A stretch of DNA of 64,000 nucleotides from Octopus sinensis (Eukaryota), in contig NC_043006.1 in NCBI RefSeq assembly GCF_006345805.1, forward strand, positions 56,730,001 to 56,794,000. The letters run 5' to 3'. The notes beneath the pieces are model-generated. The model had not been told where the DNA came from and made no database searches. It saw nothing but the letters and a program-made list of their open reading frames with translations. Position numbers and translations under genes: made by a program. Below are positions 26,963-31,440 of the stretch, piece after piece (within the stretch, counting starts at the first letter, position 1; every line of letters begins with the position of its first letter).

Positions 26963-27105
26963 TACGACTGGCTTCTTTCAGTTTCCGTCTACCAAATCCA
27001 CTCACAAGGCATTGGTCGGCCCGGGGCTATAGCAGAAGACACTTGCCCAAGATGCCACGCGGTGGGACTGAACCCGGAACCATGTGGTTGGTTAGCAAGC
27101 TACTT
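26963..27105 (-). mobile_element. tRNA-like-headed SINE, body portion; interrupted at 27105
   Basis: Matches the intact copy at 59595-59757 up to ...GCAAGCTACTT; the remainder ACCACACAGCCACT resumes at 31425. Confidence 0.85.
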
Positions 27106-29345
27106 TATTTCAAAACATTTGCCATAATGGCAGTACACAGATTAAGTTAGCTTTGCGGGCTGGACGAGGACATTAATGAGGTGAATGATAATGAAAGAAA
27201 GATGATAAGGATGGGAGAAGACAGAAAGCGCCCGCCGACTTTTGCTTCTCTAAAACATTGTTCTTTTTAAAAAGATGAACACAAAACGAGGTATTAAACC
27301 TCTTATAATTTTTCCAATTTTTGGACTTAGCAGTCCATTATTAATACAAAACGAGGTATTAATCCTCTTACAATTTTTCAATTTTTGGACTTAAGTCCAT
27401 TACTAATAATACATATCGTCCTCGAAATAGCTTGTGCCCGCGCCCTCCACCATCAACCACGCCTCCCTCAGAACGTAGTCAAGTTCCGAGTTCGCGTCGC
27501 CCGGGACCAAGTTATAATCTTCATTGAGCTCCTTTAGCCCTAGCGTCACGTCGAACGCCACGGCCTCCACAGCTACCTGCGGAGGCCATTCGGGGTCCTG
27601 TGTGAAGGCTAAAGGTGCTCCCTTGTAGTGCTCTTCCATCACTTTTTCAATTTCTTCTCCTCTATAGAAGAGGACCAATACATTCAGTTCTTTAGTTGGC
27701 GGCACAGTTTCCGCCAACGGTATTCCTTCTCTTGTCGGTGGCACAACCCCAACCGACGTAGTTCCGCGACATTCCGGTGCTACACTGACAGCCGGTAATG
27801 TCCCGTTTTTCTTCCTCTTTTTCTTTTTTTTTCCCTTTTCAACTGAGGGAGGGTGCGTCTCCTCCGTGGCTGGAAGATTCGCCTTCCTCTCCTCATCCCT
27901 ATTATCCTTTGGTGAGCACCCATTGTTGCTCACCTTCCTCTTTTGGCCTCTGTTTGAGGAGTCCTCTGCTTTTTCGGCCGTTATCGTTCCCTCTTCTAGA
28001 GGGGTTTTACTTAACTGTTCCGGGATCCTATTTTGTTCCCGAGGACAGTTCTTCTTTATGTGGCCGGACTCCAAGCACCGATGACACTTAGGGAGCGACC
28101 CTCAAGCATCACCGGGTACCTGCACCCGGCCATTTTCAAAAAATCTGGAAGAACCAGATTGGCTGATTGGGTCCACAGGGTCAAAATTGCTTTTGACCCA
28201 ACCCAAGCAGCCGCAGGAAGAACTTTTACATTGAGGAGCTTAGTTTCGCTGTCACCCAGACCCCGGCGGATAGTCTCCTCTATCTACTCGGGTTCTATGT
28301 CGGGTGGCAGTCCGCAGATCCAAGCTTTCATCAATTTCTTTTTTTTGTACGTGGGCAGGAATAAGATTTCCTTACCCTCCAAGGGTTTGCTAGCAAATTT
28401 GCAAGCCTCTTCAGGGGTGTCAAATAGCAACCACACCGTTGCATATTTGACACCCCTGGAGATGAATTTAATTGTTGGCAAATACTCTTCCAACTCCTTT
28501 TCAATTGCCGTCTTTTCGAACAGGGCGATGGTGTCAAGTGCCTTGGAGTAGGTTCTCAACACCACCATCCTATCTTCACGGTCTTTTAACCACTTTTTAG
28601 GTGGTATGATTTCCCACTCCAAAATTTTGTTATTTTTCATTGCCATGTTTTTTTTTAAAATATATTCAAATTAAACTCAAAAGCAGGAAGAAAAAGTTCA
28701 AAAGTCCAAATAAAATTTGATAGATTTTTGAAAAAACAAAAAGGAGAAAGCACAACAGAAGGGAAGAAATTAACGGAAAGTCGCAATAAAGAAAAAAACA
28801 AAAGGGGGGGGGTTAAATGAAGTTCAAAAGAAAGTTAATAAACAGAAAAAAACACAGCAAAAATATTCTGGCCTTGCGGTACTCCCGGCATGGGTTGAAC
28901 CTGGAACGCCGCAACTGCAACACAACCTCCACAAAAATGGGTCCGAAAGGTAATCCAATAGTGGCTTATTTTTATAATTTTCTTGCGAAGTACTCTGACA
29001 AGGGAATAAATTCAACAAACCCAAACACAGCACTGGCTACCGCCAACGGTAATTTTAACAGTAACTGTATTGAATTCTGAGGATACGCCCCTCCACTGTT
29101 TTTTCTTTTTTTTTCAATGAACACAAAAACGGCAGCCGCCGAGAGCAGGCGGAATTGTCTCAGAGTTGGACACAACCTACTGAAATAATAATTGGCACGC
29201 AATAAATTATGCCCAACTCACAATAAACAAAATCACTTACCTCGACAACTTTCCGTTTTTGGTCTTTTTTCTTTAATTGGACAGAGCTGATTGACTCGCG
29301 TCCACTCTGGCTGAACAGGAAGCAGCTGACTAATTGCGCATGTGC
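27106..29345 (-). mobile_element. ORF1-only non-autonomous L1/Tx1-type retroelement A (HAL1-like), 2240 bp
   Basis: Flanked by identical GTTAGCAAGCTACTT repeats (27091-27105, 29346-29360); A-rich 3' end; single ORF1-like frame; no RT or endonuclease. Confidence 0.8.
27403..28646 (-). pseudogene. ORF1p-like protein (putative RRM-like region + CCHC zinc knuckle) of element A; one nonsense codon, one frameshift
   Basis: TAG at 28284-28286 where B has W; 1-nt deletion near 28090 just before KCHRCLESGHIKKNC (CX2CX4HX4C). Confidence 0.8.
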
Positions 29346-29360
29346 GTTAGCAAGCTACTT

Positions 29361-31409
29361 TATTTTATATAATTTGCCACTAGGGTAGCACACAGAGTAG
29401 TAGCTACGGGCTGGACAAGGACATTAATGGATGATGGTGGTGGTGGATGAAGATGGTGATGGGAGAAGTCAAAAGCGCCCGCCGACTTCCGCTTCTCTAA
29501 AACAATGTTCAATAATTACATTTAATGCACAAAATGTTCACAATGATTCAAATTACATATTTTAGAGGAGGCAATAAACCTCCTCTTCAACATGTTACAA
29601 GAATGTTCAACAATTCTCCCCGTCAGGTCCCCGAAGCAAATTGTCTTGCCGCCTGCAGACAACTCTGCGACAAGTCGGGGCCTGCAAAGAGAAAAGTGAA
29701 ATGTTTCCTCTCAAAGGTTTCTGCGACCCTTGACAAAATATCTTCCGTTACTTTTTCCGCAGCTACCCGCGGAGGCCATAACGGACTCCTTGAGCCGACC
29801 GTGCCCTTGCGTTCTCGGTCACCCAAGCCATTCAAAAACCTTTCCACCTCCTCTCCCTTGTGGTAAAGGAGGAGAAGCATCTCCTCTTCACAGGAAGGGA
29901 CCTCACACTGCTCCGTCAGTGGCACACTTCCCACTGGCGGAGCCTTGTCCGCGGGTGGCACACATCCCACCCGCGGCTCCGTCGGCGACACAGAAACGTC
30001 AGTCGTCTGACCTCTCCTTTTTCTCCTCCTTCTTTTGGGGGAGACTGCTGACCCAGGGGACTCCGTCACCAGACACGGGGGATCGCTATCCCCCTCCGCC
30101 ACCTGAGCGTTCTTTGGCGGGCAACCATTGTTGCTCGCCTGTCTCTTTCTTTTCGTGGAGGCAACCTCCTCCACGACTTCCACCGTCTCCCCCTCCAATG
30201 AGGGGGCGGCGGGCGCCTTTTCCCCTTTCTGCTCCGGGGCACCACCACGGCCCCCGGGACAATTCCTCCTGATATGTCCGGGCTTCAGGCACAGGTGACA
30301 CTTGGGGGGGCGACCCTCGAGTATCACCGGGTACCTGTGCCCAGCCATTCTCAGGAAGTCCGGGAATTTCATTTCTCCCACGGCCACCGGTTTCCACAGG
30401 GTCAAAGTTGCCTTTGACCCCTCCCAGGCGACCGCGGAGCCATTTTTACACTCAGTAGCCTGGGTCCGCTATCCCCCAGGCCTCGCCGGATGGTCTCCTC
30501 GATCCATCCCGCTTCCGTGCCCGGGGGCAGCCCACAAACCCAGGCTCTTTTTATCTTTCTGCCACAATACGAGGGGAGGAACAAAATTTCCTCTCCCTCC
30601 AGGGGCTCGCTAGCAAATCTGCTAGCTTCCTCGGGGGTAGCAAACAGCAACCACACCGTTGCAAATTTAGTCCCCCGAGAAATAAACTTTATAGTTGGCA
30701 GGTGGTCCCCCAACTCTCTCTCTATAGTATTCCTGTCGAAGAGGGCGATGGCTCCACGCGACCTAGAATAGGTTCGTAGGACCACCGTCCTCCTCTCAAG
30801 ACCTTCAACCCACTGCTTGGGCGGGACAACCTCCCACTCCAAAGCAGTGGTTTCTTTCGTTGCCATGATTTTAAATGAAAAGAGAAAATGAGTTCAATCA
30901 AAAGTTCAAAGTTCTAAATAAAAGTCCAATAAAAAACACAATGAAAGAACAGAAAGACAGAGCAGAGAAAAGAACGAAGGAAGACAGTTCAGTCAATGGC
31001 AACACAGTTCTGCAACTCTGGTAATCCTAACGAAACAGGGTACTCCAGTCGCAGCACAATTGGTCCTTTCAGCCTTGGTACTCCGTGGTAAATCCAGTGG
31101 AAAACACAAAAAAACAAATTAATTTTTGCGGAGGGGCTACGCCTCCTCAAAAAGCACAATTCTCACTAAAGAGTGAGACCTTAGACACGACAACAGGCAG
31201 AGAAATATAACTGAAGCAAAGTGAAGTCTATTACCCGCAAAAAAATATTAATGCTAGATAACGTTAACTGCTAAATAACATTAAGCAAGCAATAAACTTC
31301 ACTATGCTTCTAAAAATACAGAACGTCTTACTTGTCGCCGAGTCAAAAGTTCAACATTTCACGTTCAAACACGTGACATTTGCAGGAGCAAAAAACAACA
31401 CGTCTGTCT
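29361..31409 (-). mobile_element. ORF1-only non-autonomous L1/Tx1-type retroelement B (HAL1-like), 2049 bp
   Basis: Flanked by 29346-29360 and the diverged repeat GGTAAGAAGCTACTT (31410-31424); A-rich 3' end; 3' UTR homologous to A. Confidence 0.8.
29623..30866 (-). pseudogene. ORF1p-like protein of element B; single frameshift
   Basis: Aligns along its length with the A protein (LEWE..PPK.W, LPTIKFISRG.K.ATVWLLF.TPEEA); KCHLCLKPGHIRRNC knuckle; 1-nt deletion near 30438. Confidence 0.8.
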
Positions 31410-31440
31410 GGTAAGAAGCTACTTACCACACAGCCACTCT
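31410..31440 (-). mobile_element. Displaced 5' end (A-box-like region) of the interrupted SINE
   Basis: AGCTACTTACCACACAGCCACTC matches 59728-59750. Confidence 0.75.

What the first reader, a model, noticed from the sequence alone, without database searches (positions are those of the whole stretch)
27090..31440. Two tandem ORF1-only retroelements inserted at the same site in a SINE's tRNA-like head: candidate SINE/tRNA-targeting non-autonomous system
Seen: a SINE is split exactly at ...GCAAGCTACTT|ACCACACAGCC..., and an uninterrupted copy of the same SINE at 59595-59757 shows the empty site. The ~15-bp target occurs three times (27091-27105, 29346-29360, diverged at 31410-31424). These bracket two same-orientation elements of 2240 and 2049 bp. 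Each has a 5' UTR, one ~414-codon ORF with a CCHC knuckle, a 3' UTR and an A-rich end, but no RT or endonuclease. The two proteins are clearly diverged paralogues, so this is not a local tandem duplication. Known: HAL1 elements are ORF1-only L1 derivatives, and Tx1-clade LINEs include sequence-specific inserters (U2 snRNA, tRNA arrays, microsatellites). Inference: two subfamilies independently hit one site (nick CTACTT/AC, APE-like), so a trans-acting site-specific LINE may target this SINE or its parent tRNA. The identical TSDs around A suggest A inserted second.
Basis: partly seen in the sequence, partly recalled or inferred. Interest (0 to 1): 0.88.

Follow-up and report, generated by a model that had tools for sequence, protein, structure and literature searches.

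The report
ORF1-only retroelements homing to a SINE
Two diverged, now-broken copies of a reverse-transcriptase-less "half-LINE" sit head-to-tail at exactly the same 15-bp spot inside one octopus SINE, and related copies in another octopus species adjoin the same spot, so this looks like a new variant of site-specific retrotransposition rather than a new kind of system.

Summary
A SINE on the minus strand is split at 27105|31425. The 15-mer occurs exactly twice, plus one 14-nt diverged copy. It brackets two same-orientation elements of 2240 and 2049 bp.

Both ORFs are broken: A has an in-frame stop and a frameshift, B has one frameshift. The ends are A/T-rich, not poly(A). tRNA models do not recognise the SINE head.

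Each element is 5'UTR, then a 414-codon ORF (two RRMs, one CCHC knuckle, a linker and a C-terminal domain), then a 3'UTR. This is the Jockey-like class of LINE ORF1p, not LTR gag. No endonuclease or RT is present.

- The last ~70 nt match the tails of autonomous octopod LINEs (APE + RT + zf-RVT, closest to L1 ORF2p).
- The same tail ends a second SINE family in the window, which makes 15-16-bp duplications.
- Two more copies in Octopus sinensis, at unrelated loci, also follow the SINE head cut at the same point. Both lack their 3' halves.
- dN/dS of 0.17-0.46 shows the ORF was maintained while subfamilies diverged.

Best reading: ORF1-only non-autonomous LINE derivatives, mobilised in trans and inserted site-specifically into this SINE. 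Tx1-type targeting of other transposons, tandem insertions sandwiching a duplication, and HAL1 are all published. I rate it a new variant of a known kind.

The parts
26950..27105 (-). 3' part (body and TA-rich tail) of the interrupted target SINE, including the left 15-mer
   Evidence: 88.5% identical to the intact SINE copy over 156 nt. Colinear with it after joining the flanks.
27091..27105 (-). Target-site duplication copy 1 (GTTAGCAAGCTACTT on +; AAGTAGCTTGCTAAC in element sense), 3' TSD of element A
   Evidence: Exact 15-mer, found only here and at 29346. It carries a T>A change (GCTAAC) absent from the six other SINE heads seen.
27106..29345 (-). Element A (2240 bp): 5'UTR 28647-29345; broken ORF 27403-28646; 3'UTR 27106-27402
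   Evidence: In-frame TAG at 28284-28286 and a frameshift near 28089. A 72-nt internal tandem duplication lies at 27275-27408 in the 3'UTR.
28045..28089 (-). CCHC zinc knuckle of A (KCHRCLESGHIKKNC), reached only after the frameshift
   Evidence: Weak Pfam zf-CCHC hit, E 0.005, below the gathering score. C190, C193, H198 and C203 are (nearly) invariant across 23 homologues.
27106..27263 (-). Conserved 3' module of A, including the ~70-nt LINE-type tail and the tail motif CCATTATGGCAAAT (27117-27130)
   Evidence: 77% identical to B's 3' end. The tail aligns with octopod LINE tails and SINE-T tails. The motif occurs 6 times in the window against 0.08 expected.
29346..29360 (-). Target-site duplication copy 2, sandwiched between B and A (5' TSD of A and 3' TSD of B)
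   Evidence: Identical to 27091-27105.
29361..31409 (-). Element B (2049 bp): 5'UTR 30867-31409; broken ORF 29623-30866; 3'UTR 29361-29622
   Evidence: A single frameshift near 30444.
30259..30303 (-). CCHC zinc knuckle of B (KCHLCLKPGHIRRNC)
   Evidence: Weak Pfam zf-CCHC hit, E 0.016. Read directly from the sequence.
29361..29510 (-). Conserved 3' module of B, with the tail motif CCCTAGTGGCAAAT (29372-29385) and a hairpin shared with A
31411..31424 (-). Diverged third copy of the target (GTAAGAAGCTACTT), 5' TSD of B
   Evidence: One deletion and one substitution relative to the other two copies.
31425..31441 (-). 5' head fragment of the interrupted SINE, containing the A-box-like TGGCTGTGTGG that ends 1 nt before the insertion point
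   Evidence: 96.7% match to the intact SINE. Read directly from the sequence.
59581..59757 (-). Uninterrupted copy of the same SINE, showing the empty site (...GTAAGCAAGCTACTT|ACCACACAGCC...)

Best explanation
A and B belong to two diverged subfamilies of a non-autonomous, ORF1-only derivative of an octopod L1/Tx1-like LINE group.

Each element is an mRNA-like unit: 5'UTR, one ORF1p gene, and a 3'UTR ending in the ~70-nt tail that reverse transcriptases of this LINE group recognise. The ORF1p has two RRMs, one CCHC knuckle, a basic disordered linker and a small C-terminal alpha/beta domain.

The elements have no endonuclease or RT. They must therefore be copied in trans by target-primed reverse transcription. 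This step is inferred.

The inferred insertion runs as follows. The partner's APE-type endonuclease nicks the window's + strand at CTACTT|ACC, 1 nt from the SINE's A-box-like motif. The cDNA is primed there. The other strand is cut 15 bp away, which gives the 15-bp duplication.

Each insertion regenerates the target on both sides. A second element can therefore land in one of the duplicated copies. That produces the head-to-tail pair with the 15-mer sandwiched between them, and this structure is what the sequence shows.

The middle and left 15-mers share a private T>A change, so they are A's duplication pair. B probably came first, but this is only mildly favoured. The insertions separate the SINE's A-box-like and B-box-like motifs by 4.3 kb.

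All four copies seen are now pseudogenes.
For: - The structure is exact, and joining the flanks rebuilds the SINE.
- A and B are 47% identical in protein, with dS ~1.6 and dN/dS 0.26. Ratios among all four copies are 0.17-0.46, so the ORF1-only design was selected while subfamilies diverged.
- The AlphaFold model has pLDDT >84 over residues 10-210. Its best PDB matches are tandem-RRM proteins (hnRNP A1 UP1, E 1.5e-4), and the RRMs are followed directly by CCHC. This is the Jockey-like ORF1p class (PMC3905857).
- The only sequence homologues are octopod proteins.
- In L003, L004, L005 and L006 these homologues lie just upstream of ORF2 with Exo_endo_phos + RVT_1 + zf-RVT. The best PDB match of that ORF2 is human L1 ORF2p, at 4e-41, against 1e-25 for R2.
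- The A and B tails align with the tails of those LINEs and of a second SINE family in the window, whose two copies carry 15-16-bp TSDs.
- Relatives are target-specific. The L003 LINE sits in an (ATT)n microsatellite. The L004 and L005 LINEs form head-to-tail arrays.
- Two more copies of the family, in O. sinensis (L001 and L002), lie at loci with unrelated upstream flanks. Both are preceded by the SINE head, which ends at the same position within about 3 nt.
- The window contains no EN or RT.
Against: - Only four copies at three loci could be examined. Two of those loci were found through the ORF, so no unbiased census exists.
- L001 and L002 lack both the element's 3'UTR and the rest of the SINE. 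Their 3' junctions, which are the diagnostic ones for TPRT, are unverified. Their SINE heads could be a carried 5' extension.
- No autonomous partner with the same ~155-nt 3' module, or with a SINE target, was found.
- Other elements with the same tail (SINE-T) insert at unrelated sites. Specificity is therefore not a general property of the machinery.
- No intact copy was seen.
- Tx1 membership of the relatives was not tested by RT phylogeny.
Confidence: 0.68

Rival explanations
1. Homing works through the co-transcribed flank rather than a sequence-specific endonuclease. Transcripts of copies already sitting in a SINE run into the downstream SINE sequence. That 3' extension anneals to nicked SINE DNA elsewhere, so a generic L1-like endonuclease (TT|A-type nick) together with RNA-target pairing yields the apparent site specificity.
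For: - The same tail on SINE-T goes to unrelated AT-rich sites with the same TSD length. The shared machinery therefore need not be sequence-specific.
- AATAAA is only completed across the element/TSD junction (…AAATA|AAGTAG). Transcripts would thus be expected to extend into the target.
- Co-transcription with the target is known to strengthen the specificity of R1 and R2 (cited in PMC4494074, section 20).
Against: - The nick and the second-strand cut fall at the same base in A and B, and the 5' junctions agree within about 3 nt in four copies. Annealing alone does not obviously fix both cuts.
- Relatives in the same LINE group are plainly target-specific.
Confidence: 0.17
2. The SINE head is an integral 5' extension of the element, acquired by template switch or 5' transduction as with the U1/U2 heads of some Tx1 families. 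On this view the family is not SINE-specific, and the window locus is a one-off.
For: - L001 and L002 have the head at the 5' side but no SINE remainder at the 3' side.
- Tx1 families with small-RNA-derived 5' heads, and 5' extensions carried over from a master copy's target, are documented (PMC4494074, sections 16-17).
Against: - A is preceded only by the 15-mer, which equals its 3' flank.
- The window has one head and one SINE body in perfect register with a 15-bp duplication.
- A Pol III transcript from the SINE promoter could not cross 2 kb rich in T-runs.
- The scenario still needs two hits at one site in the window.
Confidence: 0.1
3. A and B arose by local tandem duplication of a single insertion, or they are retrocopies of a host RRM-CCHC gene or LTR-gag fragments.
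For: The same orientation and the same architecture.
Against: - dS of ~1.6 and 47% protein identity contrast with identical flanking 15-mers. dN/dS of 0.26 is not expected for in-situ decay.
- The 5'UTRs are largely unrelated.
- The only repeats are the 15-mer and a 72-nt duplication; there are no LTRs.
- The fold is tandem RRM, not capsid.
- Homologues sit upstream of APE/RT ORF2s.
- The 3' tail is a LINE tail.
Confidence: 0.03

Closest known systems
Tx1-clade target-specific LINEs and their non-autonomous partners (Tx1L in Tx1D; Tx1-Mar and SINEU in Mariner-N4_AMi; Kibi/Koshi in microsatellites): Kojima 2015, PMC4494074
   Same: - APE-type LINE relatives with L1-like RT.
- Insertion at one defined position of another interspersed repeat.
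- TSD of about 15-16 bp.
- Tandem insertions that sandwich a TSD.
- Non-autonomous elements sharing the target of a presumed partner.
- Relatives that target microsatellites.
   Different: - The target here is a SINE, hit next to its A-box-like motif.
- The non-autonomous element is 2 kb and keeps a selected ORF1, whereas SINEU is a short non-coding SINE.
- The host is a cephalopod.
- The partner is not identified, and Tx1 membership was not tested by RT phylogeny.
HAL1 (half-L1) of mammals: PMC5753468, citing Smit 1999 and Bao & Jurka 2010
   Same: A non-autonomous LINE derivative that encodes only ORF1p, forms its own subfamilies and depends on ORF2p supplied in trans.
   Different: - HAL1 has the L1-type ORF1p (coiled coil, RRM, CTD) and a poly(A) tail, and it inserts without sequence specificity.
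- These elements have a Jockey-like ORF1p (RRM-RRM-CCHC), a structured non-poly(A) tail and a fixed target.
Jockey-like (RRM + CCHC) class of non-LTR ORF1p: Khazina & Weichenrieder 2009, as summarised in PMC3905857
   Same: One or two RRMs immediately followed by a CCHC knuckle.
   Different: Here there is an additional ~85-residue C-terminal alpha/beta domain after a ~120-residue disordered basic linker. That domain was not found in the ORF1s of the autonomous relatives.

Membership tests
Non-LTR retrotransposon ORF1p, Jockey-like class | [quoted passage not shown] | tested here: met
   The AF2 model shows two beta-alpha-beta-beta-alpha-beta units over residues ~15-185. The top Foldseek hits are tandem-RRM proteins. 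The CX2CX4HX4C motif lies at residues 190-203, but the Pfam zf-CCHC hit is below threshold.
Non-LTR retrotransposon ORF1p, Jockey-like class | Homologues occupy the first ORF of elements whose second ORF encodes EN + RT | tested here: met
   L003, L004, L005 and L006 carry a homologous ORF (24-33% identity) followed by Exo_endo_phos + RVT_1 + zf-RVT.
Tx1 clade of LINEs | The RT domain groups with Tx1 in a phylogeny of non-LTR RTs | not testable with these tools
   A and B have no RT. The relatives' RT is closest to human L1 ORF2p among solved structures. No Tx1 reference sequences were available. L1-Tx1 is reported as ubiquitous in molluscs (PMC10294476).
Tx1 clade of LINEs | Own APE endonuclease and RT (autonomous) | tested here: not met
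   No EN or RT similarity occurs in A, B or anywhere in the window. A and B can only be dependants of such a LINE.
Target-specific retrotransposon (any clade) | Independent copies flanked by the same target sequence at the same position | tested here: inconclusive
   Both junctions are seen for A and B, which share one locus. Only the 5' junction is seen for L001 and L002, at two further loci with unrelated flanks. No census was possible.
HAL1-type (ORF1-only LINE derivative) | Encodes ORF1p only, and the architecture is shared by diverged copies | tested here: met
   A, B and L002 all show 5'UTR, a ~414-codon ORF and a stop. A and B continue with a 260-300-nt 3'UTR and no ORF2. dN/dS is 0.17-0.46.
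HAL1-type (ORF1-only LINE derivative) | L1-type ORF1p (Transposase_22: coiled coil-RRM-CTD) and a poly(A) tail | tested here: not met
   No Pfam Transposase_22 hit appears even at E<=1. The fold is RRM-RRM-CCHC. The ends carry no poly(A).
Stringent LINE/SINE 'common tail' partnership | The 3' tail of the non-autonomous element is homologous to the tail of an autonomous LINE | tested here: met
   An alignment of about 70 nt joins A and B with the L003, L004 and L006 LINE tails and with SINE-T. The tail motif occurs 6 times in the window against 0.08 expected. The exact partner, which would share the full ~155-nt module, was not found.
LTR-retrotransposon gag | Capsid fold plus nucleocapsid, with the element bounded by LTRs | tested here: not met
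   There are no long direct repeats and no capsid-like fold.
tRNA-derived SINE (the target) | The head is recognisable as tRNA-derived | tested here: inconclusive
   ARAGORN finds 0 genes, and Rfam gives no tRNA match even at E<=10. A-box-like and B-box-like motifs can be read by eye. Octopus SINEs are reported as tRNA-derived (Ohshima & Okada 1994, cited in PMC4758252).

The most novel reading that the evidence does not exclude
This may be a long-lived lineage of ORF1-only retroelements that has split into subfamilies down to 47% protein identity. All the while it has kept its ORF under selection and kept strict homing to one 15-bp site in the promoter region of a SINE. That would be a third-order parasite: dependent on a LINE's ORF2p, nested in a SINE, and possibly contributing its own ORF1p (with its private C-terminal domain) or its co-transcribed flank to target choice.
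Probability: 0.25. Interest if true: 0.65.

Novelty: new variant of a known kind. Interest (0 to 1): 0.5.

Why it matters
If a census confirms the specificity, this would be a clear case of a LINE-type machinery using a SINE as its safe harbour. Each insertion splits that SINE's A-box-like motif from its B-box-like motif, so one mobile element would be disabling copies of another.

It would also be an invertebrate, non-L1-type counterpart of HAL1. That bears on an open question: what ORF1p does for an element that borrows ORF2p.

For annotation, O. sinensis gene models LOC115225585 (P0001) and the first coding part of the 'K02A2.6-like' model (P0021) are copies of this element, not host genes.

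Tried and rejected
- Pfam on the two conceptual proteins gave only sub-threshold zf-CCHC hits. A PDB sequence search gave nothing.
- Word-indexed protein searches with B and with a 4-sequence profile returned only P0001 and P0021.
- The exhaustive representative search gave 51 weak hits; every one whose source could be named is octopod.
- The look-up of P0002, the best distant ORF1 homologue, found nothing on record.
- The metagenome scan with peptide patterns found nothing. The scan with the 3'-junction DNA pattern gave three matches in contigs that share no other similarity with A, B or the SINE, so I read them as chance.
- A search for the elements' 3'UTR or the SINE remainder downstream of the L001 and L002 copies scored at shuffle level.
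- The upstream flanks of the three loci are unrelated, so the copies are not duplicates of one larger unit.
- A and B share a hairpin at the start of the 3' module, but the folding z-scores are not significant. I make no claim from it.
- tRNA and Rfam searches of the SINE head were negative.
- L010 and L011, fetched as possible partners, have ORF1-like ORFs but no EN or RT and no SINE-split flanks.
- In-situ tandem duplication, LTR gag and host retrocopy readings were rejected, as set out under the rival explanations.
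Full report
**What is there**

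The window looks like octopod DNA: the only close protein hit is from Octopus sinensis. An interspersed SINE lies on the minus strand. An intact copy is at 59581-59757.

A second copy is split. Its body and tail are at 26950-27105 and its head at 31411-31439. The two pieces overlap by 15 bases of the intact copy. Joining 27105 to 31425 restores a SINE colinear with the intact one.

GTTAGCAAGCTACTT occurs at 27091 and 29346 and nowhere else in the window. A 14-nt diverged version, GTAAGAAGCTACTT, lies at 31411. Between these copies lie element A (27106-29345, 2240 bp) and element B (29361-31409, 2049 bp). Both are on the minus strand, the same orientation as the SINE.

Three details are not:
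- Both ORFs are broken. A has an in-frame TAG at codon 121 and a frameshift just before the knuckle. B has one frameshift.
- The 3' ends are A/T-rich (…TTTTGAAATA, …TATATAAAATA) and carry no poly(A).
- ARAGORN and Rfam do not see a tRNA in the SINE head. A-box-like TGGCTGTGTGG and B-box-like GGTTCAGTCC motifs can only be read by eye.

**What the elements are**

Read through their defects, both ORFs give 414 residues and are 47% identical. At the DNA level A and B share about 70% over 630 bp of ORF and 77% over the last ~155 nt. Their 5'UTRs are mostly unalignable.

An AlphaFold model built on 23 homologues is confident over residues 10-210. It shows two RRM units, and its best PDB matches are tandem-RRM proteins such as hnRNP A1 UP1. 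The layout continues as follows:
- The CCHC knuckle follows the RRMs at residues 190-203.
- A disordered basic linker spans roughly 213-326.
- A small alpha/beta domain spans 330-411.

'One or two RRMs immediately followed by CCHC' defines the Jockey-like class of LINE ORF1p (PMC3905857). It is not an LTR gag and not the L1/HAL1-type ORF1p; there is no Transposase_22 hit.

An exhaustive profile-free search found only weak relatives at 24-33% identity, and every one with a known source is octopod. In four fetched loci the homologous ORF sits directly upstream of an ORF2. These loci are L003 and L004 (O. sinensis), L005 (O. vulgaris) and L006 (Argonauta hians). The ORF2 carries Exo_endo_phos + RVT_1 + zf-RVT, and its closest solved relative is human L1 ORF2p at 4e-41, against 1e-25 for R2.

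The ORF is therefore the ORF1 of an L1/Tx1-like LINE group. A and B have no ORF2, and no EN or RT similarity exists anywhere in the window.

**The tail links them to a machinery**

The last ~70 nt of A and B align with the 3' tails of those autonomous LINEs. The core motif CCHTWRTGGSNART occurs six times in the window against 0.08 expected, and 15 times in 232 kb of window plus loci. Every occurrence I read in context lies 10-20 nt before an element's 3' end.

Four of the window's six hits (two plus their mirror images) end a second SINE family, called SINE-T here. Its two copies are flanked by TSDs of 15 bp (GGTATCATAGAATAT) and 15-16 bp (ATATTTCAGGATTCT).

Machinery that recognises this tail therefore mobilises non-coding passengers in trans in this genome and makes ~15-bp duplications. 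That matches what is seen around A.

**Is the ORF1-only design a family?**

A, B and a third complete-ORF copy (L002) share the same architecture despite deep divergence. Pairwise dN/dS among the four copies is 0.17-0.46, with dS up to ~1.6. The ORF was therefore under purifying selection while the subfamilies diverged. A and B are not independent deletion products or in-situ duplicates.

All four copies seen are now defective:
- A and B are broken as described above.
- L002 has several stops and two frameshifts.
- L001 is cut at about residue 330, and its first knuckle cysteine is replaced.

**Site specificity**

In the window the evidence is direct: one SINE, two elements, three copies of the target. 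The middle and left 15-mers share a T>A change (GCTAAC) that none of six other SINE heads has. They are therefore the pair made by A's insertion at this locus, not sequence carried in from elsewhere.

B-first-then-A needs no back-mutation and is mildly favoured. The reverse order is not excluded.

Outside the window I could reach only two more copies, both in O. sinensis:
- L001 reads …GGCTGTGTGGTAAGTAGCTTGCTT|CCTGTGCATGCG….
- L002 reads …GCCGTGTGGTAAGAAGTTTGCTTCC|ACTGCGCATGTGCG….

In each, a SINE head ends within about 3 nt of the same position and is followed by the element's 5' end. The sequences upstream of the three heads are unrelated, so these are different SINE copies.

Both O. sinensis copies lack the element's 3'UTR and the remainder of the SINE. 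I cannot explain this. It leaves open that their heads are carried 5' extensions, a phenomenon documented for Tx1 families (PMC4494074).

Relatives of the group are clearly target-specific. The L003 LINE sits inside an (ATT)n microsatellite. The L004 and L005 LINEs form head-to-tail arrays with a ~5.28-kb period whose members differ by up to 25%.

**Mechanism (inferred)**

A partner LINE's APE endonuclease nicks the + strand at CTACTT|ACC and primes cDNA synthesis on the element's tail. The second cut, 15 bp away, gives the TSD. Because the target is regenerated on both sides, repeated hits build tandem arrays with sandwiched TSDs.

A variant I cannot exclude is homing helped by the co-transcribed downstream SINE sequence. 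Two observations fit it: AATAAA is completed only across the element/TSD junction, and SINE-T, with the same tail, inserts elsewhere.

**Comparison and novelty**

Kojima 2015 (PMC4494074) describes:
- Tx1 families that target other transposons (piggyBac Tx1D, Mariner-N4_AMi, LTR elements, Harbinger);
- a 16-bp TSD;
- 'tandem insertions sandwiching a TSD', attributed to sequential insertion;
- non-autonomous partners sharing the target.

HAL1 is the known ORF1-only LINE derivative (PMC5753468). Several things appear new here: a SINE as the target, hit next to its A-box-like motif; an ORF1-only element with a Jockey-like ORF1p and a structured tail; and the cephalopod host. I rate it a new variant of a known kind, with interest about 0.5.

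**Limits**

No octopus genome could be searched by DNA. The protein databases hold only two members of the family. The metagenome scans were empty. Tx1 membership could not be tested by RT phylogeny. The decisive step is a genome-wide tabulation of flanks.

Noticed in passing
window 1-13730 versus 54219-35859: A large inverted duplication, 97-99% identical, at least 13.7 kb per arm and running off the window start. The left arm stops exactly at the 100-N assembly gap (13731-13830). It could be a real palindromic segmental duplication or a scaffolding artefact. The finding lies in the ~22-kb spacer.
   Followed up: partly
window 7506-8135 (+) and 45650-46279 (-): Two near-identical ORFs with a Core-2/I-branching enzyme domain (Pfam Branch, E 1e-25). 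They are host glycosyltransferase exons lying in the two arms of the inverted duplication.
   Followed up: partly
window 6694-6935 and 2795-2973 (mirror copies near 47266 and 51241): A second SINE family ('SINE-T', with the core …TTCGGGGTCGATAAATAAGTACCAGT…). Its 3' tail is the octopod LINE tail shared with A and B. Its copies are flanked by 15-bp (GGTATCATAGAATAT) and 15-16-bp (ATATTTCAGGATTCT) TSDs at unrelated sites.
   Followed up: yes
L004 (O. sinensis CM016867.1) and L005 (O. vulgaris OX597840.1): Full-length LINEs (ORF1 + APE + RT) arranged in head-to-tail arrays with a 5.26-5.30-kb period. Members differ by 2-27%, and a short sequence (…ACTGAATACTCGTCAT…) recurs at the junctions. The arrays could reflect sequential same-site insertion or tandem amplification.
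   Followed up: partly
L003 7720-7780 and 13340-13370: A full-length LINE of the same group is inserted in an (ATT)n microsatellite, which flanks it on both sides. This is a microsatellite-targeting relative.
   Followed up: partly
L010 8001-9140 and L011 8001-8774 (O. vulgaris): Further ORF1-like (RRM-CCHC) ORFs with no EN or RT similarity within 8 kb on either side. ORF1-only loci may be common in octopus genomes.
   Followed up: no
L001 10001-10846 (LOC115225585) and L002 12438-12575 (part of the 'K02A2.6-like' model): O. sinensis gene models are built on copies of this element. One of them is a chimera with an integrase-domain exon.
   Followed up: partly
window 29330-29345 (-); L001 9491-9500; L002 11742-11753: The 5' ends of A, L001 and L002 begin with a GCGCATGCGC-like palindrome (GCACATGCGC, GTGCATGCG, GCGCATGTGCG), which is NRF1-site-like. 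B instead has TCACGTG about 40 nt in. These may be internal promoter motifs.
   Followed up: no
window 27275-27408: A 72-nt tandem duplication (89% identical) in A's 3'UTR, immediately after the stop codon. It is absent from B.
   Followed up: no
window 19341-21246 (+): Overlapping long ORFs containing an RT-like 'RYIDDCIG' motif but giving no Pfam hit at E<=0.001. This is possibly a decayed retroelement of another class.
   Followed up: no
window ~21600-25000 and 14612-15560: Several kb of imperfect CA/TA-rich simple sequence, plus a hexanucleotide array. Together they generate many spurious long ORFs in all frames.
   Followed up: no
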